DNA of 64,000 nt, from IMG/VR virus record IMGVR_UViG_3300042934_000547, positions 167,976-231,975 of that record; one strand, written 5' to 3'. The notes under the pieces are model-generated. The model was not told the origin of the DNA. It worked only from the letters and a program-made list of their open reading frames with translations, and did not search any database. This document shows positions 2,411 to 45,664 of the stretch, in pieces (position 1 is the first letter of the stretch; every line of letters begins with the position of its first letter). A program made the translations under genes and the position numbers.

Positions 2411-3232
2411 TTAATGATTATGGTTACATCCACACGATTGTTCACCAGTATGAACATGACCGCAATTACAGTCACGAGGTTCTCTAGTCTGAATTTGTGG
2501 ATTTCTTATAATCGGACTACCTCCAATAATGTAATTAATATATGTGGTTGTAAATAACAAAGTTGGATGATCATTACCACCCACAGTCAAAGTCATTTTT
2601 GTCATAAGATCATTTTCATCAAATTCATATTGGATATGTTTAGCCCCTGTAACAGATTCTTCCAGCACTTGACCTAAATCATTATCACGATATATCATGT
2701 GCGAAAGTTCATTACCATCTTCACCGATAACTATTTCACTCTTTTTGTTTGGTGAATTTGGATAAAACTCGCCTGTTACCTTAAACCCATCAATTTCAAA
2801 TGAATATTTATCACCATCGATTTTAATATCATATAACGTTTCAATCAAAGCTTCTTTATTTTCTGAATCTTGAGAATCTACCGAATGTTTAATCATTCTT
2901 ATTGGTCTTTCTAATTCATTGAATTCAGTATCCATATAATTTAAATAAAGACTACCACTTCTAGTTGTTTCAGTAAATTTGCTTTTTGTAAGTTTGTTAT
3001 TTTCGTCATAAAAATTTTCTGTTATAGAACTCGGTTCAATTTTTCTAATTATTTTATCAGTATCTTGTAAATAACTAATTGTTTTTTGATTACCTACATA
3101 AATAGACGTTTCATCATTAATACGAACAATTCTTCCGAGTTCATCAGTAAACATCAATGCGTGAAAGCATTCTCCTTCGTTTACAACCTTTCTTGTCACT
3201 AATATCTTTTTATTTGCTAAATTTTCATTCAT
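2411..3232 (-). CDS. YD/RHS-repeat-like protein (paralog 1) with Cys/His-rich tail
   Basis: YDENNKL, DNDLGQV, YEFDENDLM repeats; N-terminus similar to 3366..4055; likely start at MNENL (3232). Confidence 0.65.
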   Translation of the reverse strand: MNENLANKKILVTRKVVNEGECFHALMFTDELGRIVRINDETSIYVGNQKTISYLQDTDKIIRKIEPSSITENFYDENNKLTKSKFTETTRSGSLYLNYMDTEFNELERPIRMIKHSVDSQDSENKEALIETLYDIKIDGDKYSFEIDGFKVTGEFYPNSPNKKSEIVIGEDGNELSHMIYRDNDLGQVLEESVTGAKHIQYEFDENDLMTKMTLTVGGNDHPTLLFTTTYINYIIGGSPIIRNPQIQTREPRDCNCGHVHTGEQSCGCNHNH

Positions 3233-3365
3233 TTTATTACCCTTTCTTTGCCTCATTTTAGGATAAGATATGAGGTCTTACACATTATTTTCTTATCCAT
3301 ATCTATAATATACATTTGAAATAAGTTATATTTACATGGGGAGTGAATATTCACTCCCATTATTT

Positions 3366-4055
3366 TTAATTAAAAATTCGGTTATAAAATGTAGTGGTGG
3401 TTTCTTCTGTATTATTATCTTTATGAGACACTTTCTTAGTTAATAATCCATTTTCGTCATATGTATATTTAGTTAACTTTCCATATTGACATGTTGAGTA
3501 CCATTGATTTAATGGATTATCAATGTAAAAATTATGTATAACAACAGTATCTGTTTTTATTACCGTTGCTTTATATTCTTTCTTACGTGAAGAATTTGGG
3601 AAATAAGTAAAGTCCAATTTTCTGCCATTTATGATAAAAGTGTATGTATCATTAACTATAGTAGCATCCATGATTGTTTTTTCCTTTTTGGGATCTATAT
3701 CACCAAAAATAGAATCAGTACTACCCTTAGTGATCTGTATTATTCTCCCTAACTCATCATATGAAAATATCCATATAAAAAGGTTTACACCATCTACGTC
3801 TTTTGTATACTCCCTACCTACTTCCAATTTACCGTTTTCATCATAGACATATTCGCCACACATTGTAGAACTTATTTTAATGATTTTGTCAGTATCATTG
3901 AAGTATTCGATATTTTCTGACGATCTCGTATACTTCTTTTCCCTCCTTACAATTCTACCGAGTCTATCGGTAAACATCAGTGAATGAAATTGTTCCTCAC
4001 CATTATTCTTTCTCTTTGTTACCAAAATTACTTTCTTTTCCAAATTTTTGTTCAT
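3366..4055 (-). CDS. YD/RHS-repeat-like protein (paralog 2)
   Basis: YVYDENGKL, FSYDELGRI, YTYDENGLL repeats. Confidence 0.72.
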   Translation of the reverse strand: MNKNLEKKVILVTKRKNNGEEQFHSLMFTDRLGRIVRREKKYTRSSENIEYFNDTDKIIKISSTMCGEYVYDENGKLEVGREYTKDVDGVNLFIWIFSYDELGRIIQITKGSTDSIFGDIDPKKEKTIMDATIVNDTYTFIINGRKLDFTYFPNSSRKKEYKATVIKTDTVVIHNFYIDNPLNQWYSTCQYGKLTKYTYDENGLLTKKVSHKDNNTEETTTTFYNRIFN

Positions 4056-4182
4056 CTTGTTTATTCTCCTTTTTAGGTTTTTAAATAAAAATCTATGTTT
4101 TTATTCATATCTATAATATATACTTGAAAAAATAACTAGAGAAAAAAGAAGGAGGATGAAATTAATCATCCTCCATTATTAT

Positions 4183-4710
4183 TTACTTTCCAGTTGAGCC
4201 AAAGCCCTTCTCACCACGAGATGATGGGGATAATTGTTTTTTAATTACCAGCTTATCAGGTTTAATTCCAGTAGATATAACTAGTTGAGCGATTCTATCA
4301 CCGATAGAAACTATATATTCACTTTCACCTAAATTGAATAATACTACCTGAATTTCTCCTCGATAAGATTCATCTATTGTTCCCGGACTATTAAGAACAA
4401 ATAAATCATGCTTACGAGCTAGTCCACTTCTACTACGAACATCGGCGTATAATTCTTCCCAAGGGTTTAATCTGATATTAATAGACGATAAATCAATCCA
4501 AGTTCCAGTTGGTATGATTCGTTTTGATTTAGGTGGAATAGTAACATTTATAGTGCTTTGTAAATCCATTCCTATAGAACCTTCATCTTCGAATTTAGGT
4601 AAGAATTTTTCATCTGTAACCTTTACATCCATTGTGATTTTTGGTATATTTGGTAGTGCTGACAGTGTACCAGTAAAACACATTTCTGAATTAACTATTA
4701 AATTATCCAT
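4183..4710 (-). CDS. dut: Trimeric dUTPase
   Basis: GMDL, RSRSGLA, NSPGTIDESYRGEI, GDRIAQL, RGEKGFGSTG (motifs 1-5). Confidence 0.97.
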   Translation of the reverse strand: MDNLIVNSEMCFTGTLSALPNIPKITMDVKVTDEKFLPKFEDEGSIGMDLQSTINVTIPPKSKRIIPTGTWIDLSSINIRLNPWEELYADVRSRSGLARKHDLFVLNSPGTIDESYRGEIQVVLFNLGESEYIVSIGDRIAQLVISTGIKPDKLVIKKQLSPSSRGEKGFGSTGK

Positions 4711-4767
4711 TATAAACTCCTATTTATTATATTTGATTTTATCTTATAGTTGATCATAAAGATTTTT

Positions 4768-5226
4768 TTAAATTTGTGGGAATAGTACGATATCTCTATA
4801 TTGGGTCAAAATCAAAAATTCCCTTATAGCCCTCACATGTCCTAGTTCCTCAATCCCATCTGTAATTAAAGTAAAATCCTTTTGTAATGTCTCTAACCTA
4901 CTTATTATTAGATCATAATCATCTGCTGTTGAGCTACGAGTATTATAAATGAATGCATCTAATATACCGAACAATTCCGTTCGTTTATTATCACAATCTT
5001 CATTTATGAGAGGTAGACTTTGTTCTGGTGTGAGGTTTAATGAAACTTTAATTAATTCTACCTCTTGTTTAATTGCTAAGTCGCATGAAGCTAATTCAGT
5101 CTCTATTGATAGCTTAAGATCAGGTGATAAAGTTGTATCACTATAATTACTAAGTATTTCTTTTAATTCATCATTCTTTTTAATCAATGATCTTAAATTA
5201 TTAAAACTAATTTTTTCATATATCAT
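4768..5226 (-). CDS. Hypothetical protein
   Basis: 152-aa ORF, GGAGGT RBS, GACA-N6-TA variant upstream. Confidence 0.6.
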   Translation of the reverse strand: MIYEKISFNNLRSLIKKNDELKEILSNYSDTTLSPDLKLSIETELASCDLAIKQEVELIKVSLNLTPEQSLPLINEDCDNKRTELFGILDAFIYNTRSSTADDYDLIISRLETLQKDFTLITDGIEELGHVRAIREFLILTQYRDIVLFPQI

Positions 5227-5299
5227 AATATATTACCTCCAATATTGGTTAATTAGAATAGTGTCATAAAAAAGAAAGAGAGGGAATCCCCTCCTTTCA

Positions 5300-6031
5300 T
5301 TAAAAATATTGATACGAATCAATATAATCAGTGGTAGATAATGAAACTAATCTTTGAACCCCATCTTCAAATTTATCACTATATATTGGAGTGAAGAGTT
5401 TAATCTTACCAAAATTATCAATGTAAGATAATAGTGAACCGAATTTGTCATAGATATATGTATCTACAGCATCTTCTTTATTTGGTTCAGATACGATTAA
5501 ATATTTCTTTGTTCTACCTGTTGATAGAGTCTCATATCTGTATAATTGAGTAATATTAGTTTTTAAATCTCTTTCTTTCGTAATTCTTCTGTTCTCGTCA
5601 TAATCATAATCTATTGAAACAAATCCTCTCTGATTTATTAATAGATCACCATCATCATATGTATATTTAGAGATCATTCTACCTAAGTCATCGCACTCCT
5701 CTATTAATAAACAAGGATCATTATTGTCATATTTATAGAAGATTTCGTGTATCTTATTTTTTATACTATTTGTTGAATGTATAAGCCTTTGTAGTTCATC
5801 ATAATAACTTTCTTTAATAACGTTTAAATTATTTTTAAAGTTAACTGCTGTGACAGATTTTGTATTATTATCAGAAAAAACTGTCATTTGTTCCCACTCT
5901 GGTTTAGCTGTAGGGTTCTTAAAACTCTGCATCCTAATTACCTCATTTTCTCCATTGTAGAATACCTTATCTACTGAATTATTTGAATACTTTCTTGTTA
6001 CGATTTTTGTAACTTGGTTTTTGTTAATCAT
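5300..6031 (-). CDS. YD/RHS-repeat-like protein (paralog 3)
   Basis: YYDELQRL, YTYDDGDL, YDYDENRRI, YIYDKFGSL. Confidence 0.7.
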   Translation of the reverse strand: MINKNQVTKIVTRKYSNNSVDKVFYNGENEVIRMQSFKNPTAKPEWEQMTVFSDNNTKSVTAVNFKNNLNVIKESYYDELQRLIHSTNSIKNKIHEIFYKYDNNDPCLLIEECDDLGRMISKYTYDDGDLLINQRGFVSIDYDYDENRRITKERDLKTNITQLYRYETLSTGRTKKYLIVSEPNKEDAVDTYIYDKFGSLLSYIDNFGKIKLFTPIYSDKFEDGVQRLVSLSTTDYIDSYQYF

Positions 6032-6087
6032 TTTGTTTGTCTCCCTTTATATTTTATTTTTAATAGAATATGATTCTATTATTACTT

Positions 6088-6921
6088 CTAAACGTATAAT
6101 ATCTGTTTTATGTAATTGCTGGATTTAATCTCAATTAATTGATTGTTTCTGGTATAATATAATTTATATGAGTCCTTAAATACCGTTTTATCGTCTTCGA
6201 TTATTTCTGTAAATATTCTATCACCTTTATCATTAAATTCAGTAAAAGTAATATCAGTTATGCGTTTATTTTGTTCATTCTTATATTGCATAAATTCTTT
6301 ATTTGTAGCTTCCTTACCATTTTCATGATATGTGTATTCAGTAACATGAATTTTATCTGCATCATTATCATATGTATGAGTTATAGATTTAATCTGGTTC
6401 TCATCATTGTAATAATAATCAGTAACAATACCATTTTTGTGATTTATGTATCGTGTCAAATCATTTCTGATATTATAATAGTATGATGATAATATTCTAC
6501 CATTCTCATCACATATCTCACTTATCATATCACTGTTTTCAAAATACTTCATTATCACAATATTATCATCTGAAACTAATTCTGATAATAATCCACTTCC
6601 ATTATATTTATATAATGTGATTTTAGGTACACCAGTTTTGATATCAAAATCAAATGTACTAATTATCTTACCAGACAAATCATATTCTGACTTAGATAAT
6701 ACAACTCCATTAGTATTATACTTAGTTTCAATAATTCTAGTATTACTATGAGTAAAAACTGTTCTAAGTTCTTTAATAAGTTTACCCTTAGTATTAACCT
6801 CTTTCTCATATAGAGATTGACCTGAGTCATTAAACATCTCAAGTCCAATTTTAGAAATCTTACCTTCTCCATCATTAAATTTAGTTGTAACTATCTTAGT
6901 TACCTTATTTGAATTCATCAT
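6088..6921 (-). CDS. YD/RHS-repeat-like protein (paralog 4)
   Basis: EYDLSGKI, YKYNGSGLL, YYYNDENQI, YTYHENGK; N-terminus similar to 5300..6031. Confidence 0.72.
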   Translation of the reverse strand: MMNSNKVTKIVTTKFNDGEGKISKIGLEMFNDSGQSLYEKEVNTKGKLIKELRTVFTHSNTRIIETKYNTNGVVLSKSEYDLSGKIISTFDFDIKTGVPKITLYKYNGSGLLSELVSDDNIVIMKYFENSDMISEICDENGRILSSYYYNIRNDLTRYINHKNGIVTDYYYNDENQIKSITHTYDNDADKIHVTEYTYHENGKEATNKEFMQYKNEQNKRITDITFTEFNDKGDRIFTEIIEDDKTVFKDSYKLYYTRNNQLIEIKSSNYIKQILYV

Positions 6922-7516: not shown

Positions 7517-8131
7517 ATGAATATAAAAAATAAGATTAGGTTATTCTTTCATAAATATAATTTAGATAATATATTTCTATTCTTTAATAATGATATAGAT
7601 TTAGAAACTAAAACGACCATTCTGAGTGAGGAAGAAATATTAAGCAATCCTTTAGCTAGTTTATGTCAGCACCCATTTTATTCTATTATAGATATAAGCT
7701 TTGTTAATCAAAAAATAGTAATCAGTCTAGAGTCAATTATAACTCTAACCATATTACATGATTGTATTCAGAATATTTATAATAGAACGTCTGACTATAT
7801 ATTCACATTTGACATCACACGGTCTTATAAGATAGATAAGCTCGTAATCGATGTGGAAATACAATTCAGTACGACTCAGCAGGCTTATAAGTATTTACTC
7901 CTTTTACTGACTGACCTTAACCTAGAACTTATAGAAAGTGTAACTGTAGAACCTAAAAATATTTACGAGCATGATGATCTACTAAAATATTTCAATTCAT
8001 ATCAAGTAAATTATGAATCATATATACGATATTTGGATTCTAGTAAAACTAAACCTCAAATCAAATATATTATTGATGTACTTCATAATCATAATGATAT
8101 GATTAAAAATATTCGTGATTTAATACATTAG
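7517..8131 (+). CDS. Hypothetical protein
   Basis: 204-aa ORF, AGGAGG RBS, AACA-N6-TA at 7479-7490. Confidence 0.65.
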   Translation: MNIKNKIRLFFHKYNLDNIFLFFNNDIDLETKTTILSEEEILSNPLASLCQHPFYSIIDISFVNQKIVISLESIITLTILHDCIQNIYNRTSDYIFTFDITRSYKIDKLVIDVEIQFSTTQQAYKYLLLLLTDLNLELIESVTVEPKNIYEHDDLLKYFNSYQVNYESYIRYLDSSKTKPQIKYIIDVLHNHNDMIKNIRDLIH

Positions 8132-8143
8132 AAAAAAAAATAA

Positions 8144-8169
8144 ACCTCTAGGACTTTAATCCTAGAGGT
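8144..8169. terminator. Bidirectional intrinsic terminator
   Basis: acctctagga-ctttaa-tcctagaggt between convergent genes, flanked by A/T tracts. Confidence 0.8.
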
Positions 8170-8180
8170 ATCTTTATTTT

Positions 8181-9200
8181 CTATAAATCCGTATATATTT
8201 CTTCTAATAGATTTCCATCCATATCATAAATTTTTCTATGCTTTTGATACTTATCAAATCTTACAGCTTCCTTATTCCATTTAGAATAAATAAACTCTTT
8301 AAAATGACATTCTATATCATTATAAATGAAATCTCTTTCCATCATCAACTTAGAGAAGTTTCCATCATGGAAATATATACTTCCACCATCAGGCATGATG
8401 ATATTTTTGTATTCATAGTCGTCGATTTTTTCTGTTACCATTACTACATCATGTGGTAACGATTCTATAGTAACGGTGTGCCCCTGATTAGCAGCTACTA
8501 TTGTGTAAGAACTAGGACGTCTTTGAAGTACCTCAAAATTATCAGTTGGTTTTAATAATATCTTATCCCTAATTTTACTATAATTGATCTTACCATAAAC
8601 TGATGAAACTAAATCTCTGAATGAAGAGTAATTACCATCTGTTAAAATAGATGTACCGTTCTCAGTGATATTAGCTAATAAGCCACTCTTGCTATAGAAA
8701 TATTTAAACTCTTTCTTAGCTGGTATTATGACTATCATTCGTTCCACATCGTGACGATATGATGTGTATGAATATATCATATGAGATACAGTACGTTGGT
8801 CGTTTAAACCTAAAACGCTTTTAACTAACAACAATTTGGTATCCATATTATTATAAATGCTTATTGTTGCCTTACCAGTAACTTCATCATATATTATAAC
8901 AGTATTACCATATTGCACTCCCTTTATTTCACGTTTAGTAACTTCGCCAGTAACAAGATTTGTCGTCCTATGTATTTGGTGTGGTAAATCTTCACGCAGA
9001 CTCATGTATTCAACATTTAATTCAGTTGATGCTACAAAGTCAGTCTTTGTCTTTATTCCACCATAGTTATTATAAATCTCTTCCTTTAGAAGTTTACCCT
9101 GAGACTCTTCGGTCCCCTGTTCATAAAGATATGTATGTCGTAACTTTGATTGTCCATCTACTAATGCATATACTTTCCTTAATTCATTTTTTCCTTCCAT
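8181..9200 (-). CDS. Divergent YD-repeat-like beta-rich protein (paralog 5, weak)
   Basis: YNNYGGI, FYSKSGLL, IYDMDGNLL; likely start MEGKN at 9200 after AAGGAGG. Confidence 0.5.
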   Translation of the reverse strand: MEGKNELRKVYALVDGQSKLRHTYLYEQGTEESQGKLLKEEIYNNYGGIKTKTDFVASTELNVEYMSLREDLPHQIHRTTNLVTGEVTKREIKGVQYGNTVIIYDEVTGKATISIYNNMDTKLLLVKSVLGLNDQRTVSHMIYSYTSYRHDVERMIVIIPAKKEFKYFYSKSGLLANITENGTSILTDGNYSSFRDLVSSVYGKINYSKIRDKILLKPTDNFEVLQRRPSSYTIVAANQGHTVTIESLPHDVVMVTEKIDDYEYKNIIMPDGGSIYFHDGNFSKLMMERDFIYNDIECHFKEFIYSKWNKEAVRFDKYQKHRKIYDMDGNLLEEIYTDL

Positions 9201-9361
9201 TTGTATCCTCCTTATATAACCTTTTAACTTATCGTTTATATAATATATACCCATATCAAATTTTGAAAATAAAAGGGAGGAGTGAAATTAATCACTCCCA
9301 ACAAGATGATTTTTATTACTTTACTTATAACCGAGACTTATGATATAGTTATATATATTTA

Positions 9362-9535
9362 GAAAAAAAAATATCGGGTAGGAAATCAATCCTACCCATT
9401 AGGCATGTGTAAAAGTAATTGATTTATATGAATTAAAAAAGGAACGTTGTTGATGGAAAACAAATTTTAGGAGTTATACATAACAAATTGTCTTCACATG
9501 CCTATTTTATTTAACTGAAATTTTCTTATTCAATT
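9362..9535 (-). ncRNA. Candidate ~170-nt small RNA
   Basis: AACA-N6-TA at 9535-9546(-); closing stem 9400-9409/9495-9504; terminator hairpin 9376-9397 plus T-tract; no ORF. Confidence 0.5.
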
Positions 9536-9555
9536 ACCTTATTGTTATTACCCTA

Positions 9556-9669
9556 TTAATTATTATTACGTTGAATTGGTATAATATTATGAGTAAATTT
9601 GAATAGTAATTGTTCAGACTCTTCCACCATCAATGCCTCTAGTATGAATTTCTTTTCATTAATTGTCAT
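9556..9669 (-). CDS. 37-aa hypothetical protein (not in ORF track)
   Basis: MTINEKKFILEALMVEESEQLLFKFTHNIIPIQRNNN*, directly after the ATP-cone gene, AAGGA RBS. Confidence 0.45.
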   Translation of the reverse strand: MTINEKKFILEALMVEESEQLLFKFTHNIIPIQRNNN

Positions 9670-9672
9670 AGT

Positions 9673-10521
9673 TTATTTTTCCTTTATTATGTATTCTAAA
9701 TTATTCAGTTTAAGTTTATTAGCATAACTAAATAATTCAGTGGCAAATATATCATCACATTGTTTATGCCAATTTATTTTTTCTTCATCTGTCATTTCCA
9801 ACAGCGTACAAAATTCATCATATCTATCTATATATAGATATACCTTAGATTTATTATCCCATACATCCAATGTTTTATCTAATCTCACTTTACGAACAAT
9901 AAATCGTGCCAGTGTTTTTAATACATTGATATATAATTCTTTATTGAAACGTCCTGATTCTTCAAATAACTGAAATACATTTACAGTAAATTTATTGTAT
10001 CTAATTCTATCAAGACTAATATATCCACTGTATATATATTTAAATAAATCGTATCGCTCATTTATCTGTATTGGATAACTAAAATTATTCATATTAATAT
10101 TGTGAGTACATTTCGATACCCAATCATTAAATTTCTTTGAATTAATATTAGTATGTAATATCTCAGTTACCGTATAACTAGGTTGTATATTGATGAAATT
10201 ACTTAATGGTATTTCATCTACACAATTCACAGGAACATAGGAATTTGCTCGGTTATTATTATAACAGACGTAATACTTAAGAGCCATAGGTTCATATTTA
10301 ATGAGTAATCGTTCAATAGCCTCCTGTATCTCACAGCTTTGAACTATATCCCTAGAACCAAATTCTTTTTTGATTTTTCCAGAGATAGTATAAACTAATG
10401 AAACGTCCTCTAGATATTTTTTAGGATTGCAAGCCACCAAAACTGAATTTAAAATAATATTGAGTTTTTCTTTATTAAATGGTTCTACCGCCCCGTTCCG
10501 TTTAATAATTAAAGTAATCAT
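9673..10521 (-). CDS. ATP-cone domain protein with degenerate RNR-like C-terminus
   Basis: IIKRNGAVEPFNKEKL...EIQEAIERLL ATP-cone signature. Confidence 0.75.
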   Translation of the reverse strand: MITLIIKRNGAVEPFNKEKLNIILNSVLVACNPKKYLEDVSLVYTISGKIKKEFGSRDIVQSCEIQEAIERLLIKYEPMALKYYVCYNNNRANSYVPVNCVDEIPLSNFINIQPSYTVTEILHTNINSKKFNDWVSKCTHNINMNNFSYPIQINERYDLFKYIYSGYISLDRIRYNKFTVNVFQLFEESGRFNKELYINVLKTLARFIVRKVRLDKTLDVWDNKSKVYLYIDRYDEFCTLLEMTDEEKINWHKQCDDIFATELFSYANKLKLNNLEYIIKEK

Positions 10522-10676
10522 ATTGTAAGTCTCCCTTCTAATGCCTATTAATTAAATTATCTTTATGTTTGTTTTTTCGTTAAATATTCTACAGTTACAT
10601 AAATCAATATCTCCGTGAAATTTATTATTTTATACCATTGCAACATTATAATAGTTGTGGAAGACTAAAGGAGAAT

Positions 10677-11489
10677 ATGATGATGGAAAATAAAATAGAT
10701 GTACAAGGATATAAGTATTATTCAATAGAAGATAATATTATTAGAATCTCTAAAGATAAAAATGTTATTAATGATAAGTGGACTAAACTGAAAATGGATG
10801 CATTAATGGCTTTTCATATAATATCGAATGATGATGGAGCCAAATATATTATGGTTGCTATGTACAATAATGGTGACTATAAAAATCCTGTTCTGATATT
10901 TGTTTCAAATTTTATAAATGAATGGGACGCAAATATTGGTAATAGAATACTAGGGAAAACATTCAACAGGTATACTGGAATTGATGAAAATTTATTTAAG
11001 GTTATAAAAATAGAATATTCCGAATATGTTGCTATATATAAGGAAGATTCATTTAAAAATATTTATGACCAACTTATTAATAAAGATAAGTTTAATGAAG
11101 TCCTTAAAGCATTTAATTCTGCTTTTATAGAAATGGGTAATCTTAATATATCTCTACCTGATAATCTTTATGATTATATGAAACACGGTGCATTTGATTA
11201 TGACTACGATAATGAATTAGGCATTGAGCAACTTGAATTTGACCTTGAAATAGATAATGAGAGACTAATCAACCAATTAGACTTAGAAACATTTCTCGGT
11301 CATAAATTAATTCAACCTGTTATAGTCAAATATAATCGAATTATAGTTTTAGAAGATATCAAAAAAGACTATGGATTATTCCGTGACGCCACTGATACAT
11401 TATATCTAGTTACGTTTATTCGTGGAGATATAATAGATGATGAAAACCTAGATTTAATCGAGTGGAATAAGAGCTTTGGAGTGAGGTAA
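10677..11489 (+). CDS. Hypothetical protein
   Basis: AAGGAG RBS before MMMENK; AACA-N6-TA at 10642-10653. Confidence 0.6.
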   Translation: MMMENKIDVQGYKYYSIEDNIIRISKDKNVINDKWTKLKMDALMAFHIISNDDGAKYIMVAMYNNGDYKNPVLIFVSNFINEWDANIGNRILGKTFNRYTGIDENLFKVIKIEYSEYVAIYKEDSFKNIYDQLINKDKFNEVLKAFNSAFIEMGNLNISLPDNLYDYMKHGAFDYDYDNELGIEQLEFDLEIDNERLINQLDLETFLGHKLIQPVIVKYNRIIVLEDIKKDYGLFRDATDTLYLVTFIRGDIIDDENLDLIEWNKSFGVR

Positions 11490-11560
11490 TAAAATATATT
11501 ATAAATATATATTATAACAATGAATTAAACAAATTTAAAATTTTAGGAGGAACAACAAAG

Positions 11561-12280
11561 ATGGATATGGATAATACATTCATGAACCCAAACCAAGTGA
11601 ATCAAAAGGAAATAAAGGATTACGAAGCAGAATTCGATACTCCAATTACATTAAGTGAGCCGATGAGATTTTATATCGAGACCACTACACGTTTAGGTAT
11701 GGAGATATTAAAGAAGTATACTCCAATTTTCGGCGACTTAATCGGTACGTTTATTACGGTTAATACCAAAGGCGATCTTGAAGTATCATTACAGTTTGAG
11801 AAAAAAGGTGCTGGCAATGTTGTAGACTTATTCAACAACAGTGACTTCAACCAAAGAATTACAGCGTTCAATACGCTTAACACAACAAACAGAATCTTCG
11901 ATTTAGATGATACTGTTAAAGGAACTTTCCAAAGATTCTTAATCAAAGCTAATCCAATGCAGAAAATTGATTGGAATCAATATATCAGACAAATAACAAT
12001 CAACAACAACACTATGAGTGGAAAGCACACAATTCTTGAATTGGCTCACATTTCACTTGATAGATTGCTGCCTGAATTAATATTTGTTGGAGAAGATGCT
12101 AAGAAAAAACGCACTACTCAGATTAAGACTATTATAACTGGTTCTGTAAATCCAGCTTCACCATTATCAAAAAATTGGTTCGTGAAGATAGATATGCTGG
12201 ATCAAGCTACTGTTGATTTCGTATCTAAAGAAGCAGGAATTGTTACAAGCACTTACGGCTTGGATATGATAACACTCTAA
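11561..12280 (+). CDS. Hypothetical protein, probably abundant and early
   Basis: AGGAGG RBS, tandem TATATTATA motifs at 11494-11516, own terminator 12289-12311. Confidence 0.65.
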   Translation: MDMDNTFMNPNQVNQKEIKDYEAEFDTPITLSEPMRFYIETTTRLGMEILKKYTPIFGDLIGTFITVNTKGDLEVSLQFEKKGAGNVVDLFNNSDFNQRITAFNTLNTTNRIFDLDDTVKGTFQRFLIKANPMQKIDWNQYIRQITINNNTMSGKHTILELAHISLDRLLPELIFVGEDAKKKRTTQIKTIITGSVNPASPLSKNWFVKIDMLDQATVDFVSKEAGIVTSTYGLDMITL

Positions 12281-12338
12281 TATAGCAGAGGGTATACATT
12301 ATGTATACCCTTTAATTTTTCTCTATGGAGGTACACTA

Positions 12339-12668
12339 ATGGCTTTCGAAGACAAACTCGAATATGACATAGAACAAGAATTAGGTGTATTTGATGAAAA
12401 AGGAAATACATCACTTGAATTAAGAGTTGTAAGCTGGAATAAGAAGCCTGCTAAACTTGAATTAAGAAAATGGGTAACCAACAGCGATGGTCAAAATCCA
12501 AATAAAGGATTCTCATTCTTAACTGATGAAGGTCCGCATCGTCTTGCTGAACTTTTAGTTGAAAATAATTTTGGAGATACAAAAACTCTAAAAGCTCTTT
12601 TAATTGATAGGGATGATTACGATGAATCTGAATCAGATTATGACTATTTGGATGAAGAAGAAGAATAA
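12339..12668 (+). CDS. PC4/YdbC-family ssDNA-binding protein
   Basis: IEQELGVF..LELRVVSWNKKPAKLELRKW..KGFSF pattern plus acidic tail. Confidence 0.75.
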   Translation: MAFEDKLEYDIEQELGVFDEKGNTSLELRVVSWNKKPAKLELRKWVTNSDGQNPNKGFSFLTDEGPHRLAELLVENNFGDTKTLKALLIDRDDYDESESDYDYLDEEEE

Positions 12669-13418: not shown

Positions 13419-14468
13419 ATGAATAATTATCAAGTAGAAGTAAGCCAATTATTGGGAAAATTCTATGTTGCGTATAGCAAATTAGAAACTATTGTAAATG
13501 CTTTATTTGCTGCATCCACAGAAAATATTTCCCATATTAATATCTATCTAGATATTAATTCTATGACTAAGGTGCTATATGGAAATATTGACTTTAGAAT
13601 GGATGAAAGACTTCTTATATCTGCAAGTATCGTAAACTTATGTGCTCATTATAGGTCTTTCTTTAGACGCTACTATAATACAGAGACTACATTTTATATT
13701 ATAGATTCTCATAATTTACCCTTAATTAATCGACGTATAATAAAGGATTACAATATCTCTTATGCAAAGAATATTGATACTAAAAGAGATTTATTGAATA
13801 AAGTTAAGGTGAATATAGAATGTACAAAGATGCTATGCGAATATTTACCAGAAATATATGTTATCCCTACGACGTTTGAAACTGGTGTTATAGTACGTGA
13901 ATTGATGGGGAGAGAACAGAATAAACCTACGGCACACATGGTTATTACTAAGGACCCATATAATTATCAATTGATAACTGATGTAAAGAATTCATTTATA
14001 TTGAGACCAGTTGATAAGGAGAAAACTTATTTTGTTGAATCTTCAAATTTGTTTAAAGTAATTGAAATTGAACGAGGATTAAAAAGGGGACTCGAACCTC
14101 TTATTTCCTCACAACTATACTCTATATTATTATCACTTATTGGTATCAAAGAACGCAACATTAAAAGTATCTTCAGTATACACACGGCAATGAAGATGAT
14201 CCAAGAGGGTATAGAGAGTAATTGTTTGGTTAATGGATATAATCATAATCCAAATTTATTCTTTAGTAGAATAAATGGGGTAAATCCAGAGGAACTAAAA
14301 AATAGATTTGAAGTGATAGATTTAATTTATCAACATAAAATATTTGTGACTCATCCAGAATTTCAATTATTAGACACCTTTATAATAGACAAACATAATC
14401 CACAGGAAGTGAGGGAAATATGTAGTAAATATTATCTTTTAGATCCTATAGATTTAGAGAGACTGTAA
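13419..14468 (+). CDS. FEN/PIN-fold 5'-3' exonuclease-like protein (divergent)
   Basis: IYLDINS, FYIIDS, VITKDPYNYQL resemble PIN/FEN strands; several catalytic acids appear lost. Confidence 0.45.
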   Translation: MNNYQVEVSQLLGKFYVAYSKLETIVNALFAASTENISHINIYLDINSMTKVLYGNIDFRMDERLLISASIVNLCAHYRSFFRRYYNTETTFYIIDSHNLPLINRRIIKDYNISYAKNIDTKRDLLNKVKVNIECTKMLCEYLPEIYVIPTTFETGVIVRELMGREQNKPTAHMVITKDPYNYQLITDVKNSFILRPVDKEKTYFVESSNLFKVIEIERGLKRGLEPLISSQLYSILLSLIGIKERNIKSIFSIHTAMKMIQEGIESNCLVNGYNHNPNLFFSRINGVNPEELKNRFEVIDLIYQHKIFVTHPEFQLLDTFIIDKHNPQEVREICSKYYLLDPIDLERL

Positions 14469-22383: not shown

Positions 22384-23679
22384 TTATTTAGCCATTTTTC
22401 CAATTATATTTAATAATTGTTTTTCTTTATTTTGTCCTTCTTTTTCTAAACCTTTATATGAAATAGTCTCATATAATGGTGAAGTTTCATCGAATAAGAA
22501 AGAGGCAGTCTGGGTAGAATCATCCATGATAACAAAACTCATTAAATTATAAGCTCTCATTATAGGAGTTATAACATTCTCATTCATTAAATTGAGTTTG
22601 AAATTAGCCATGATATAATCAGCCATTTCCTGAGAAATAACGAGTGTGGTAATAGCCATAGCAGTATTCTTAATACCCATTATACGTCTAAGTTTATTAG
22701 ATGTAGCTAGATTTTCAAGAACACGCCAAGCTCTTGATGCTGGACCCTTTCTAGAATTGGATAATGCATCCTCTTTAGCTTTATCAACAGCAAACAACAA
22801 ATCTTTTATAAATGATATTTCTCTAGTAGTAGCTTTGATAAGTTTAGTGAAATTATTCATATCCTTATTCTTAGCAACCAAATGAGTGATTATATCATCT
22901 GAATCAAGTGGATACAGTTTAGCCTTAACCCCTATGATAAATGATAATGGTATAACAACACCATCTTTGCCTTTATACATTAAATTTACTTGGAATGTAC
23001 TTGGGATTAATTCGTTAGATTTTTTAACATCATTATCCAACAGCTTGTTATCAGATGACCATTTGCTGTAATCATTGAGACCTTTTATGAGGTCATTAGC
23101 AGCTCGATTGTTGTTTACTGCTAGATTACTATCTCCGGGTGCCTCTGTTAATGATGTGCCATAAAGCTTTCCATCTAATGTGAACCTAATATTTTCTATA
23201 GATTGTTCATTACAATTATCATGAGTGTAAAAAACATTAATGTTTCCCATATCCTCATTTAATTGTTTTTGAATATCCCCTATAGGAATATTTGTATCAA
23301 TTCCAGCATCTTCACTGAAATCGTCTAGGGCATCACTTATATCTAGGATGTCATTAACTGACGGAGTAGATGAAAGCTTTAAATTGTTATGATATTGTGA
23401 TAAAATATCTTTTAGATTAGCACTTCCTTGTACCTGATTAGCTGCTAATACTAATCGTATGATTGTAGTTCCTTCACGTTCAATAGCTTTAGCTGCCATC
23501 ATAGCAGATTCTATAGGGAGTGATTTAGGCACGAATACTGGATAGACTAAAATTGACTCATTAGCCATTTGATATAAAGATCTTCTTCCTGCACCTTTTT
23601 TGATACGTTCCAAAGCCTCTATACCATCATAATCTTTTGCAGCATTAGTGAAATCTAAAATTTCTCTTAGTATAGTCAT
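22384..23679 (-). CDS. Putative virion structural protein
   Basis: 431 aa, AAGGAGG RBS, late-type promoter at 23709-23720, x-x-E sites. Confidence 0.5.
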   Translation of the reverse strand: MTILREILDFTNAAKDYDGIEALERIKKGAGRRSLYQMANESILVYPVFVPKSLPIESAMMAAKAIEREGTTIIRLVLAANQVQGSANLKDILSQYHNNLKLSSTPSVNDILDISDALDDFSEDAGIDTNIPIGDIQKQLNEDMGNINVFYTHDNCNEQSIENIRFTLDGKLYGTSLTEAPGDSNLAVNNNRAANDLIKGLNDYSKWSSDNKLLDNDVKKSNELIPSTFQVNLMYKGKDGVVIPLSFIIGVKAKLYPLDSDDIITHLVAKNKDMNNFTKLIKATTREISFIKDLLFAVDKAKEDALSNSRKGPASRAWRVLENLATSNKLRRIMGIKNTAMAITTLVISQEMADYIMANFKLNLMNENVITPIMRAYNLMSFVIMDDSTQTASFLFDETSPLYETISYKGLEKEGQNKEKQLLNIIGKMAK

Positions 23680-32313: not shown

Positions 32314-35300
32314 TTATTGTGTTAGTGGTAACATTGCAGCGATTAATGCCGTTAAACTATTGTCTCCTGTTCCACCCTTACCACCCTTTTCATTGATGAT
32401 ATTGAGTAATGCATTTGGGTTTATAGAGTTTCCAGAAGAAGACTTCTTAGTAAGTTCTTTAATATCGTTCTCAGTGATATTTATATTTAATTTTTTGGTA
32501 ATTAAATTCAATATGTCTTGGAGAAGCTCATTCGTTCTACCAATATTAGATACTGACATTACAATCCTTGTAAGAAGTTCAATTAAGTTGGCATCAATTG
32601 TACCAGCGTTGATTGTTGTGTTAATATTTTGACCACCGAAATTACTTTTCATTATATTCTCACGGTCACGCATTGACAATTCGGCAACTGATGACATATC
32701 AGCATCCATAAACTCAAAACTATTAGGATTATCCATAGCATCTAATTTACGGCTCTCATCAGCAAGTTCAAATGCACTCTTAATAACAGGAGATGTTTTA
32801 CCGAACCCACCAAATCTACCAGATTTCTTAGCGTTACCAAATCCACCTATCTGAGCGTTAGGATCAAAGTTCTTAACCCTAGATGCCATTATATCCGATA
32901 TAGTACCAGACCATTTTGGATCAGATGCGTAGTATTTATTCACACCACCCAAACTTCCATCGATATAATATTTTCCACCCGGTGTTAAATAGTTATTCTT
33001 TAACAATCTTGCTGTCTCATCGAAATTTTGAGCCGGGCTATCGAATGTTCTGGCTGATTTATATGGACTGCTATCATAAGCTGCATAACCAGAGAAATTA
33101 TTTTTATTTTTGGCTAAGGCACTTGTACCCCATCCACTTTCAAGAGCGACTAATGAAGATAAGAATAATGGATTTACACCAAATTTATTGGCTGCATTAG
33201 CTAAATCATTGGCATGTTTCTTCAATGGTTTATTTGCATAGGCACCAGTAAAGAATTTGTTTTGTAAATCTGCCCCACTTAATGAACCAAATCCACCACC
33301 ACGTCTTCTAACAAATCCCATACCAGCAGGCATTTGAGCTAGATTAGATGTATTGACAGCAGTTGAATTGATATTAGTGTAACCACCTATAGCATTAGCG
33401 AATGAAGCTGCTAAACCAGTAGGCATTTGAGTTCCACCATTCTCACGTGTCCAGTTAGCGATTTTTGATAAGATATTCTCATGGGTTTCGAATCCGTATT
33501 TAGTTCCAACAACTCCCATAATAGCATCACCGAATAAACCAATACCAGACGCCATTTTACCCATCCAATCAAATAATCCACTTTCTTTATTACCACCTTC
33601 AGCAATAGTTGGAACATTTGCGAACCCTGCACGATCGGTTAAACGTAAGTTCTTACCATTAATGTCAGTATAAGCCCACATGCTCTTAGTTGTTCCATTT
33701 TTGAATAATGCATCCTTTGAAAACTCTGTACTTTCTCCTTCACCCATAGGGTCATTTACCCATACACTATTATCACTAGCCATACCAGTTACAACTGAAT
33801 AATGACCACCCGGAGTATATGGAGTAGTACTAATATTTCCTTGACCATTTATAACAACTGGTCTACCCGCTTCAATATTTGCTTTTAATGAATCCCAAGT
33901 ATTACTAATATTCTGTCCCTTTACGTTGTAATCACTTAATTGTGGATTACTACTGCTAGAGAACATGTCATGAGCAGTTCCTGCATTATCAATCCAATAA
34001 CGTAATCCCATATCTGTTAAATCTAGCGGTGATATAGGTTTATTGTTAAATGCAGATGTAATCATTGACATTGCTGTTGGTCCACATGCAGCATCACCAT
34101 ATGTGTAATTTTGAGCATAATACAAATCTTTCCATTGAGGATCATTTTGGGACCAATATGGGAAACCATTAAGCAATCTTAATTGGTTATTAAATGATAC
34201 GTTTTCACCAACCGTAGTTGCTTTTCCATCTAGGTATTCTTCATAACCTCTCCACCTGTTGTATATTGCATCTACTCCCGTTTGTTGTTCTAATGCCTTC
34301 CTTAATTCTTCATTATGAGCATTAGTTTTTTGATAATAATCTGGTGCTAAAGATTGTTGATATTCAGTATATTTCTTCCAATAATCAGTATTCTGAGATA
34401 TTGGAGTACCCTTTGGCGTCGTTGATATCCGTCTAGAATTTGATGTCCTATTCGCTGGTTTACCTTTATTATTACCGAATCCTCCACCAGTTAAATATTG
34501 TTTCGAATTTGATGAAGTTCTCGGATTTATGAATTTAAACTTACTATTACCGAATCCTCCACCAGTTAAATATTGTTTCGATGAATTTGATTTACCACCC
34601 ATCCCAACTACTGTTGAATCACCATCTTCGATTATATAACTATCAGCGAGTTCTCTCTTGGTTTGAGATTTAGGCACTGATGGAACTTTATCTAGATACT
34701 TATTCTGTAATTGAGCCATTGTTCTGCTATCTTCAGTTATATCTAATTCGCCATTCCATGCATCATATAACCATACCGCAAGTTTTTGAAGGAAGTTATA
34801 TCCTAAGAATGATGTTGTTACTAAGTTGACAATTTCGAGAATCCATACAGCAGGAGCTTGTAATAAAAATTGCATCACTCCTGATATTGCTTGCATTTTT
34901 GCATCAACATCTTCTTTTGGTACTCCAAACCATTTAGCTGCACCTGTCTTTGATGCACCCCATGCTCCAAATCCAACCATGAATACTAGATTCACAATTC
35001 CACCGGTAGCAATACCAGCAACATCTCTACCAGATTTCTCAGCTATTTTAGCTGCAATTTTGGTATTACTGAAGTATTTATGACAGCTAGAAAATGTATT
35101 TTTGATAAATGCACTAAGTCCTTTTTGACCAAAGTTAGGCATGAATTTTTTAACCACTTTGAGGATACTTTCGATAACTGGATCTAATAATCCAACAAAC
35201 CAAGTAACTAGTTTACCTCTAGAACCTTCAACAGCAGTTCTTATACCTTTCTTGCTTATATTTTTAGCTGTGACTTCTGCACCCTCTTCTAATACTTCTT

Positions 35301-43509: not shown

Positions 43510-43612
43510 AACTCGATTTCTCCTTTCTATATTACTGTATTGCCTTATGAGTATGTTGAAAAGAAACAAAAAGTGGGAGTACAACTTAATGTACTCCCAA
43601 TTGATCTAATTA

Positions 43613-45570: not shown

Positions 45571-45664
45571 ATAATCATCCTCCCAAAATCATATAATACT
45601 ATGTTTGAGAACGTGTATATTTATAATAGGGAACAATATAATAATAAAAATTAGGAGGAATAAT

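What the first reader, a model, noticed from the sequence alone, without database searches (positions are those of the whole stretch)
9673..10521. ATP-cone fused to a degenerate ribonucleotide-reductase fragment (pseudo-RNR)
Seen: a clear ATP-cone. The C-terminus (FTVNVFQLFEESGRFNKELYINVLKTLARFI...SKVYLYIDRYDEFCTLLEMTDEE) parallels the class I/II RNR segment (CNLGSINL...FD...L...V....RFL...R.IGLG..G.AD....L....EE) but lacks the catalytic Cys and Gly residues, and the protein is only 282 aa. Inference: a catalytically dead RNR mimic that could sequester dATP/ATP or disturb inhibitory RNR or NrdR oligomers to deregulate dNTP supply.
Basis: inference. Interest (0 to 1): 0.6.

Follow-up and report, generated by a model that had tools for sequence, protein, structure and literature searches.

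The report
Dead ribonucleotide-reductase remnant with ATP-cone
A giant phage that already has a working ribonucleotide reductase also carries a small orphan gene. This gene joins the reductase's ATP/dATP-sensing "ATP-cone" to a shrunken, catalytically dead piece of the reductase barrel, so it is most likely a nucleotide-sensing regulator rather than an enzyme.

Summary
The ORF at window 9673-10521 (minus strand, 282 aa) is real. It has a strong ribosome-binding site, the phage's codon usage, an AR9-type late-promoter motif 48 nt upstream and a downstream terminator. About 95%-identical copies in two other public runs show no indels in it.

Residues 5-92 are a bona fide ATP-cone (Pfam E 2e-9). 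Residues 166-273 align with the segment of monomeric class II reductase (NrdJ) that starts just after the catalytic finger loop (hhalign P 0.0014; 0 of 400 shuffles reach the score). The radical cysteine, the glutamate and the strand-F cysteine are replaced by Ser165, Tyr167 and Tyr175. About 380 reductase residues between cone and fragment are absent, and so is everything after about residue 590.

Full-length AlphaFold2 and ESM models hit reductases and glycyl-radical enzymes first (best Z 10.6). A model of the C-terminus alone does not, so the structural support is fragile.

The protein has no detectable homologue among 1.84 billion representative proteins. The phage has a complete, host-like NrdJ elsewhere.

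The "pseudo-RNR" identity is reasonably supported. The proposed action (dATP/ATP sensing, interference with cone-mediated oligomers) remains untested inference.

The parts
9673..10521 (-). Coding sequence of the 282-aa orphan protein (P0001), stop codon included
   Evidence: ORF list and translation. Codon-usage log-likelihood is best in frame 0. No indels in the listed contig pieces of about 95%-identical relatives in runs X2 and X3, while indels occur in the flanking intergenic DNA.
10246..10509 (-). ATP-cone domain, residues 5-92
   Evidence: Pfam PF03477 E 2.1e-9, 38.2 bits, above the gathering score. hhalign E 1.1e-7 to NrdD cones. Lys7, Arg8, Tyr87 and Arg91 occupy the positions of Prevotella copri NrdD Lys7, Arg8, Tyr83 and Arg87, which contact dATP (alignment; residues from PMC11226230). 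This is the most conserved part among strains: 3 differences in 321 nt in X3 and 1 in 258 nt in X4.
10027..10245 (-). Residues 93-165: unassigned linker region, low model confidence
   Evidence: No family match. pLDDT is below 50. Residues 139-164 weakly resemble NrdJ strand A and helix A (195-220), score 17.7, about the 90th percentile of shuffles, so not significant.
9703..10026 (-). Residues 166-273: degenerate reductase-barrel fragment, equivalent to NrdJ 474-586 (finger-loop tip remnant, strand F onward)
   Evidence: hhalign P 0.0014, 0 of 400 shuffles reach the score. Extension to residue 166 with a permissive setting. pLDDT 70-86 for residues 190-282 of the full-length model. VIA-align top nine hits are reductases or a glycyl-radical enzyme, best Z 10.6, rmsd 3.0 over 120 residues.
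10531..10538 (-). Shine-Dalgarno sequence GAAGGGAG, 9 nt before the ATG
   Evidence: Read directly from the sequence. AGGAG-type words are the most enriched words upstream of this phage's genes.
10558..10569 (-). AR9-type late-promoter motif AACA-N6-TA; predicted transcript start at 10558
   Evidence: The motif AACA-N6-TAA occurs 20 times in sense orientation in 11.5 kb of upstream intergenic DNA. Shuffles give 3.5 +/- 1.9 and the genome average is 0.12 per kb. 19 of the 20 lie 22-52 nt before start codons, one at 70 nt. The AR9 late-promoter consensus AACA-(6N)-TA/G is experimentally defined (PMC5312081). For this gene it is a motif match only.
9365..9398 (-). Intrinsic terminator (9-bp stem, 5 G-C pairs, T-run), about 275 nt after the stop codon
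   Evidence: Terminator scan: 3 found against 0.5 expected. Sequence.
9556..9669 (-). 37-codon ORF starting 3 nt after the stop codon, inside the same predicted transcript; coding status unknown
   Evidence: Translation. No test of coding was possible.

Best explanation
The gene encodes an exapted remnant of a ribonucleotide reductase catalytic subunit. It consists of a still-functional-looking ATP-cone, a linker of about 70 residues, and roughly 100 residues descended from the second half of a monomeric class II (NrdJ-type) barrel. The barrel fragment has lost every catalytic residue, and the cobalamin-binding part and the first half-barrel are absent. It therefore cannot reduce nucleotides. 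What is shown: the domain content, the loss of catalytic residues, the signs of a maintained and expressed gene, and the presence of a complete cone-bearing NrdJ in the same phage. What is inferred: the protein reads the ATP/dATP ratio through its cone. Because cones act by nucleotide-dependent cone-cone or cone-core contacts, it would dock on another cone-bearing protein and alter that protein's dATP feedback during late infection. The likeliest partner is the phage's host-like NrdJ; less likely partners are the host's NrdJ, NrdD or NrdR.
For: ATP-cone above the Pfam threshold, with key nucleotide-contacting positions kept. Significant, shuffle-controlled profile similarity of residues 176-273 to NrdJ 485-586, which grows with profile diversity. 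Catalytic Cys, Glu and Cys replaced. The full-length AF2 model and the ESM Atlas model both retrieve reductases first. All 30 language-model neighbours are cone-plus-NrdD clusters, with 192-196 of 256 features shared. A 282-codon frame stays open in 28% GC DNA despite about 17% identity to NrdJ, with phage-typical codon usage, a strong ribosome-binding site and a terminator. No indels in relatives, and lower divergence than neighbouring genes. The phage's own NrdJ (784 aa, cone plus complete barrel) is 65-70% identical to Sedimentibacter/Tissierellia enzymes, so it probably still carries host-type allostery. It also has an AACA-N6-TA late motif 45 nt upstream, the same promoter class as the orphan. 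Nucleotide-driven cone-cone oligomerisation is the established mode of cone action (PMC11226230, PMC5794259).
Against: No binding evidence exists: the complex prediction with NrdJ 1-718 gave no verdict. The RNR-like fold is not reproduced when residues 96-282 are folded alone (best Z 6.7 to unrelated chains; NrdD only at rank 17, Z 5.0). Both models have low overall confidence (pLDDT about 48). NrdD and dimeric NrdJ profiles do not match the C-terminus (P 0.81 and 0.16). Some cone positions differ from well-studied cones: Arg11 to Ala, Arg91 to Tyr, and NrdJ Arg88 to Asn. No relatives exist beyond about 95%-identical strains, so long-term selection cannot be measured. Five other large NrdJ-carrying phages lack any such gene, so the function is not general.
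Confidence: 0.35

Rival explanations
1. The identity is the same (cone plus dead reductase remnant), but the protein has been re-used for a target outside nucleotide reduction, as betaherpesviruses re-used their inactive R1 subunits. The cone would gate, by ATP/dATP level, an interaction of the C-terminal domain with some host or phage protein, for instance a defence or replication factor.
For: Viral dead R1 homologues with new partners are well documented (UL45: PMC5469499; HHV-6B: PMC11772975). BORF2, the EBV R1 bound to APOBEC3B, is among the top structural hits. The gene lies about 160 kb from the nrdJ/thyX nucleotide module, among orphan genes. Its divergent neighbour also carries a late-promoter motif.
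Against: No partner or motif is identifiable. There is no PADLOC match. Nothing distinguishes this reading from the main explanation except gene location.
Confidence: 0.25
2. The C-terminal 190 residues are not derived from a reductase. The protein is an ATP-cone fused to an unrelated small alpha/beta domain of unknown function, and the reductase resemblance arises because predictors associate cones with reductases, plus a borderline alignment.
For: The C-terminus-only model loses the reductase signal. Pfam, NCBIfam and PHROGs find nothing beyond the cone region. Only one of three reductase profile families matches. The part-only language-model hit shares just 143 of 256 features, in the range of chance hits or distant relatives. 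Cones do occur on non-reductase proteins, for example the cone-cone-uridine-kinase protein P0003.
Against: The hhalign test used the C-terminus alone, with no cone context, and beat all 400 shuffles. The aligned register is structurally sensible: strand, helix, strand, helix as in the model. The register improves with a more diverse profile. Part-only language-model neighbours are 28 of 30 NrdD clusters.
Confidence: 0.2
3. It is a decaying leftover of an older reductase gene, made redundant when the phage acquired a host-like nrdJ. It is translated or not, but has no function.
For: It is an orphan with no relatives beyond near-identical strains. In AR9, the reductase genes sit immediately upstream of the homologue of window gene 13419-14468, so this neighbourhood may be the ancestral reductase locus. 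The phage nrdJ looks recently acquired.
Against: Divergence to about 17% identity while keeping 282 codons open in AT-rich DNA, together with ribosome-binding site, promoter motif and terminator, argues for selection on the protein. Indels occur in flanking intergenic DNA of the relatives but not in the gene, and the cone region is the least diverged stretch. The only in-gene variant listed is synonymous, Leu204 CTG to TTG.
Confidence: 0.15

Closest known systems
Monomeric class II ribonucleotide reductase (adenosylcobalamin-dependent NrdJ / RTPR), including the phage's own 784-aa copy
   Same: An N-terminal ATP-cone. Residues 166-273 align with NrdJ 474-586, the segment following the finger loop.
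   Different: About 380 residues between the cone and that segment, and about 200 residues after it, are absent. The radical Cys, the Glu and the strand-F Cys are substituted. Identity is about 17% over the aligned 98 residues. There is no Pfam barrel match.
NrdR, the bacterial repressor of nrd genes (zinc ribbon plus ATP-cone)
   Same: A small non-catalytic protein whose only recognisable module is an ATP-cone. NrdR acts through nucleotide-dependent oligomerisation.
   Different: There is no zinc ribbon: the cone starts at residue 5 and the 7 cysteines form no CxxC pair. The cone scores with reductase cones, not with the NrdR cones of candidate hosts. A regular-expression scan found no tandem NrdR boxes in the phage genome.
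Catalytically inactive R1 homologues of betaherpesviruses (HCMV UL45, MCMV M45, HHV-6B R1)
   Same: A virus keeps a reductase large-subunit relative that has lost its catalytic residues and presumably serves another role (PMC5469499, PMC11772975).
   Different: Those are full-length barrels without an ATP-cone in eukaryotic viruses. This one is a fragment of about 100 residues with a cone, in a phage.
Split reductases (Pseudomonas aeruginosa NrdJa/NrdJb; genes in pieces in some phages)
   Same: A reductase-derived polypeptide much shorter than a full catalytic subunit.
   Different: Split enzymes keep all catalytic residues and have the complementary piece encoded nearby. Here the residues are lost, and no other reductase fragment exists in the 232-kb genome: there is no NrdD match, and the only barrel match is the intact nrdJ.
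ATP-cones transplanted to other subunits (NrdB of Leeuwenhoekiella blandensis)
   Same: It shows that a cone can act away from the catalytic barrel, through dATP-driven cone-cone pairing (PMC5794259).
   Different: There the cone is fused to a working radical-generating subunit.

Membership tests
ATP-cone domain family (Pfam PF03477) | Profile match above the curated gathering score | tested here: met
   38.2 bits against a 25.8 cut-off, E 2.1e-9, covering profile positions 3-87 of 88. The genome scan gave 40.7 bits.
ATP-cone domain family (Pfam PF03477) | Basic and aromatic residues that contact the nucleotide(s): the Lys-Arg pair in the first hairpin, and the aromatic and Arg residues in the last helix | tested here: inconclusive
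   Lys7, Arg8, Tyr87 and Arg91 are present. The equivalents of P. copri NrdD Arg11 and Arg91 are Ala11 and Tyr95, and NrdJ-invariant Arg88 is Asn88. Binding itself was not measured.
Ribonucleotide reductase catalytic subunit (class I/II barrel, Pfam PF02867) | Complete 10-stranded alpha/beta barrel recognised by the family profile | tested here: not met
   There is no PF02867 match even at E 10 for residues 95-282. Only about 100 residues are alignable, and the protein is 282 aa against 784 aa for NrdJ.
Ribonucleotide reductase catalytic subunit (class I/II barrel, Pfam PF02867) | Finger-loop Asn-x-Cys-x-Glu motif with the thiyl-radical cysteine | tested here: not met
   NrdJ Cys473, Gly474, Glu475 align with Ser165, Gly166, Tyr167. 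The Asn471 arm falls in a deletion.
Ribonucleotide reductase catalytic subunit (class I/II barrel, Pfam PF02867) | Redox-active cysteine pair on strands A and F | tested here: not met
   The strand-F Cys484 aligns with Tyr175. The only, non-significant, strand-A candidate has Tyr149 at the Cys205 position. Feature definition from PMC9669993.
Class III reductase NrdD (Pfam PF13597 plus glycyl-radical domain) | NrdD core profile match and C-terminal glycyl-radical motif | tested here: not met
   No PF13597 match anywhere in the genome. A profile of 30 Clostridia NrdD sequences matches only the cone; the C-terminus gives P 0.81. Language-model neighbours labelled NrdD are leads only.
NrdR repressor | N-terminal four-cysteine zinc ribbon preceding the cone | tested here: not met
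   The cone begins at residue 5 and the sequence has no CxxC pair.
Viral pseudo-reductases (inactive R1 homologues) | Reductase-derived sequence with loss of catalytic residues, retained as an intact gene | tested here: met
   (derivation and residue loss). (intact, maintained gene). This is a functional grouping, not a sequence family.

The most novel reading that the evidence does not exclude
A phage-encoded anti-feedback factor: a free-standing ATP-cone on a dead reductase stub. In its dATP- or ATP-loaded state it would pair with the cone of the phage's recently acquired, host-type NrdJ (or of host reductases or NrdR). That pairing would block the inhibitory state, uncoupling dNTP synthesis from dATP feedback during late infection. 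This would be the first trans-acting protein regulator of reductase allostery built from the reductase itself.
Probability: 0.2. Interest if true: 0.8.

Novelty: new variant of a known kind. Interest (0 to 1): 0.5.

Why it matters
ATP-cones are the master switch of dNTP supply. Apart from NrdR, they are known almost only as parts of working reductase subunits. A phage protein that keeps the switch but discards the enzyme would be a natural tool for probing how cones signal. This applies especially to class II enzymes, whose cones are conserved but have no assigned function ("cryptic function", PMC9669993). It would also show a new way for viruses to tune nucleotide pools, and a bacterial-virus parallel to the dead R1 proteins of herpesviruses. 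If it is only a relic, it still documents how a displaced metabolic gene shrinks in a jumbo phage.

Tried and rejected
- **Close or distant homologues: none found.** The word-index search returned only the query itself. The full phmmer scan of 1.84 billion representatives returned the query plus one cone-only hit, a cone-cone-uridine-kinase protein. IMG/VR and JGI metagenome scans were empty. tblastn and megablast against 50,697 phage records were empty. There are no paralogues in the genome except the NrdJ cone.
- **Split-gene idea rejected.** There is no NrdD match and no second barrel fragment in the genome. The downstream 357-aa ORF has no family match.
- **Synteny in relatives.** AR9 and Listeria phage LPJP1 have no ATP-cone at all. 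Five large NrdJ-carrying IMG/VR phages have one cone gene each and no P0001-like sequence.
- **Complex prediction** of P0001 with NrdJ 1-718 gave no verdict (score 0.00, controls not run). This is not evidence either way.
- **Folding residues 96-282 alone** gave pLDDT 47.9 and no reductase signal.
- **Foldseek** of the full model placed T. maritima NrdD on top, but at E about 0.5.
- **NrdD and dimeric NrdJ profiles** against the C-terminus were not significant.
- **Strand-A remnant** at residues 139-164: p about 0.1, so not claimed.
- **Weak NCBIfam hit to AbiGI** (E 0.0016, 17.9 bits against a cut-off of 300). It was not reproduced in PADLOC and was dismissed.
- **Weak PHROG hits** (reductase large subunit E 0.0055; DprA-like E 0.051). 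These add nothing beyond the cone.
- **Anti-NrdR idea.** A regular-expression scan found no tandem NrdR boxes in the phage, and the cone is not NrdR-like.
- **Uracil-DNA idea** (from the AR9 kinship) is weakened, because the phage encodes ThyX.
- **Reads.** Read laying was given 4,301 letters.

Full report
**Setting.** The window is the last 64 kb of a 231,975-bp IMG/VR virus record with direct terminal repeats, judged complete, at about 29% GC. A handful of its proteins (a virion-protein pair, a GroEL-like protein, a primase and the product of window 13419-14468) are 23-30% identical to those of Bacillus phages AR9/PBS1, Listeria phage LPJP1 and Staphylococcus jumbo phages. The genome carries 45 copies of TATATATTAT with the extended form seen in AR9 early promoters (AR9 consensus in PMC5312081). 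It also carries an AACA-N6-TA(A) motif enriched about 14-fold upstream of genes, nearly always 22-52 nt before start codons, matching the AR9 late-promoter consensus. The phage is therefore a distant AR9-like jumbo phage.

Its complete class II reductase is 784 aa: ATP-cone, RNR_Alpha, class II insertion domain and barrel (genome 14657-17011). It is 65-70% identical to enzymes of Sedimentibacter and other Tissierellia/Clostridia. This suggests such a host and a fairly recent acquisition. The phage also encodes ThyX.

**The observation.** The ORF is at 9673..10521 on the minus strand, 282 codons.
- It is preceded by GAAGGGAG nine bases before the ATG.
- A late-type motif AACATAAAGATA lies 48 nt upstream.
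- No early-promoter copy lies upstream of it.
- A strong hairpin-plus-T-run terminator follows about 275 nt downstream.
- Its codon usage fits the phage in frame 0 and in no other frame.

Contigs from two other studies cover the whole 8100-12400 stretch at roughly 92-97% identity: X2 ("organism A", very deep) and X3 (wastewater). The listed pieces over the gene have no gaps, whereas indels occur in the flanking intergenic DNA. The 5' (cone) part is the least diverged: 3 differences in 321 nt, against 5-8% in neighbouring genes. The only in-gene variant the tool listed is synonymous. A 258-nt contig of a wastewater metatranscriptome lies on the 5' part of the gene, but DNA carry-over cannot be excluded. 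I conclude it is a real, maintained protein-coding gene.

**The N-terminal domain.** Pfam ATP-cone matches residues 5-92 at E 2.1e-9, above the gathering score. Profiles built here confirm it: E 1.1e-7 against cones of 30 Clostridia NrdD proteins and 4.7e-5 against NrdJ cones. The best PDB sequence match is the cone of Prevotella copri NrdD. Using that alignment and the published contacts (PMC11226230), Lys7, Arg8, the aromatic Tyr87 (Tyr83 in PcNrdD) and Arg91 (Arg87) are retained. Arg11 and Arg91 of PcNrdD correspond to Ala11 and Tyr95. Nucleotide binding is thus plausible, but the stoichiometry (one or two nucleotides) is open. The cone scores with reductase cones (13-24 bits against NrdD and NrdJ). 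No NrdR cone of five candidate-host genomes appears among its best 40 matches.

**The C-terminal part, sequence evidence.** Family libraries see nothing there.
- **120 close NrdJ homologues.** hhalign of residues 95-282 alone gives one local alignment, P0001 176-273 to NrdJ 485-586 (score 27.7-28.0, P 0.006). In 300 shuffles of the query the maximum was 28.4, reached once.
- **156 sequences, including 41-63% identical viral NrdJ.** The same alignment rises to score 32.1, P 0.0014. None of 400 shuffles reaches it (mean 15.8, sd 2.7, max 28.6). A score that rises with profile diversity in an unchanged register is what homology predicts.
- **Permissive alignment.** The match extends back to residue 166, pairing Ser-Gly-Tyr-Ile-Ser-Leu-Asp with the finger-loop tip Cys-Gly-Glu-Ile-Leu-Leu-Asp.

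In this register the thiyl-radical Cys473 is Ser165, Glu475 is Tyr167, the strand-F redox Cys484 is Tyr175, and Asn485 is kept as Asn176. The Gly-Cys-Ser-Leu-Thr-Gly strand is Tyr-Leu-Tyr-Ile-Asp-Arg.

Two other reductase profiles did not match the C-terminus: NrdD at P 0.81 and dimeric class II at P 0.16, in a different register. After allowing for three families tried, the NrdJ result remains significant but not overwhelming. A possible strand-A/helix-A remnant at residues 139-164 is only at about the 90th percentile of shuffles, and I do not claim it.

**The C-terminal part, structural evidence.** The single-sequence AlphaFold2 model of the whole protein is poor overall (pLDDT 48.8) but reaches 70-86 over residues 190-282. 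Its strand-helix-strand-helix-helix-strand order fits the alignment.
- An exhaustive VIA-align search put reductases of all three classes and a glycyl-radical enzyme in the first nine places. The best was P. copri NrdD (Z 10.6, rmsd 3.0 over 120 residues, 17% identity). About 23 of the top 40 hits belong to that superfamily.
- Foldseek also ranked T. maritima NrdD first, but at E about 0.5.
- The ESM Atlas's own model matches class II and III reductases at a query-normalised TM-score of about 0.6.
- All 30 language-model neighbours of the full protein are cone-plus-NrdD clusters, with 192-196 of 256 features shared.
- For residues 95-282 alone, 28 of 30 neighbours are NrdD clusters, but with only 143 shared features.

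As a control I folded residues 96-282 without the cone. That model is no better (pLDDT 47.9) and no longer finds reductases: the best Z is 6.7 to unrelated chains, and NrdD appears at rank 17 with Z 5.0. The structural signal may therefore be partly induced by the cone context. I treat it as supporting, not decisive. I put the probability that the C-terminus descends from a reductase barrel at about 0.75, resting mainly on the context-free profile test.

**What it cannot be.** It is not an enzyme:
- At most about a fifth of the barrel is present.
- Every catalytic residue in the aligned part is replaced.
- The first half-barrel, the class II insertion domain, the cobalamin-binding region and the C-terminal cysteine pair are missing.

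It is not half of a split reductase. The genome has no NrdD match and no barrel match other than the intact nrdJ. It is not NrdR, because it has no zinc ribbon.

**How it probably works.** Cones act by binding ATP or dATP and changing cone-cone or cone-core contacts (PMC11226230, PMC5794259, PMC12662201). The phage has one obvious cone-bearing partner, its own host-like NrdJ. That gene also carries a late-type promoter motif directly upstream. Candidate hosts have NrdR and NrdJ, and some have a third long cone protein. My best guess, at about 0.35, is that the orphan is a nucleotide-sensing modulator that docks on such a partner and changes dATP feedback late in infection.

This is inference. 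The only test I could run, a complex prediction with NrdJ 1-718, returned no verdict. Rivals:
- The same pseudo-reductase re-used for an unrelated target, as in betaherpesviruses (0.25).
- A cone fused to a non-reductase domain (0.2).
- A functionless relic of an ancestral reductase gene (0.15).

The relic idea gains some colour from AR9, where nrdI-nrdE-nrdF and dCMP deaminase lie immediately upstream of the homologue of window gene 13419-14468. It is opposed by the long open frame at 17% identity, the intact expression signals and the indel-free, cone-conserving variation among strains.

**Novelty.** Dead viral R1 homologues (PMC5469499, PMC11772975), free cone regulators (NrdR) and split reductases (reference in PMC9669993) are known. 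In four literature searches I found no description of a phage protein that keeps the cone on a truncated dead barrel stub. No homologue exists in the protein collections searched. I therefore rate it a new variant of a known kind. Interest is moderate (0.5): it is a single lineage-restricted orphan with an untested mechanism, but it is directly testable with ordinary biochemistry.

Noticed in passing
whole genome; in the window e.g. 779(-), 4122(-), 6998(-), 11506(+), 12767(+), 28967(+), 53330(-), 63647(+): 45 copies of TATATATTAT, with an extended consensus close to TTTYAARTATATATTATAGATATGAATA. This matches the experimentally defined AR9 early (virion RNA polymerase) promoter AAATATATATTAT-(6N)-G. 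The phage appears to use AR9-type transcription although its proteins are only about 25% identical to AR9's.
   Followed up: partly
upstream intergenic regions genome-wide; window 10558-10569(-), about 10642-10653(+), and before genes 7517(+), 22384-23679(-), 54247(+): The AACA-N6-TA(A) motif is enriched about 14-fold before start codons (20 sense hits against 3.5 in shuffles). It equals the AR9 late-promoter consensus. The target gene, its divergent neighbour and nrdJ all carry one.
   Followed up: partly
window 10638-11489 (+): The listed TTG start is probably wrong. An AAAGGAGAA ribosome-binding site followed by ATG-ATG-ATG lies near 10677, and the late-promoter motif lies inside the nominal 5' end of the ORF. 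The product has no family match.
   Followed up: no
window 9556-9669 (-): A 37-codon ORF starts 3 nt after the target's stop codon and lies before the terminator, so it would be on the same predicted transcript. This 3' stretch is the most diverged part among strains (6-7%).
   Followed up: no
G000:C1:14657-17011 (-), outside the window: A complete monomeric class II reductase with ATP-cone, 65-70% identical to Sedimentibacter/Tissierellia enzymes. It points to the host clade and to recent gene capture. Upstream it has an early promoter, a small ORF, a terminator-like hairpin and then a late motif, an arrangement like the continuously expressed reductase genes of AR9.
   Followed up: partly
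G000:C1:26115-26963 (-), outside the window: A ThyX (flavin-dependent thymidylate synthase) gene, E 7e-29. This argues against uracil-DNA despite the AR9-like promoters, whose late class in AR9 is read through template-strand deoxyuridine.
   Followed up: no
G000:C1:13954-14520 (-), outside the window: A 188-aa ORF with an RHS-repeat match (E 4.5e-10), directly downstream of nrdJ.
   Followed up: no
window 8100-12400, in public runs: A relative about 92-97% identical is present at very high depth (about 2,500) in run X2, labelled with a single organism, and at low depth in a wastewater run. The high depth suggests a cultured or enriched phage-host system may exist.
   Followed up: no
window 32314-43584 (-) and 45605-49951 (+): Very long ORFs of 3,756 and 1,448 codons. 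They were not examined.
   Followed up: no
L008 (AR9) 2698-6875 versus window 10-13.4 kb: In AR9, the homologue of window gene 13419-14468 is preceded by nrdI, nrdE, nrdF and dCMP deaminase. In this phage the corresponding slot holds orphan genes, including the pseudo-reductase on the opposite strand.
   Followed up: partly
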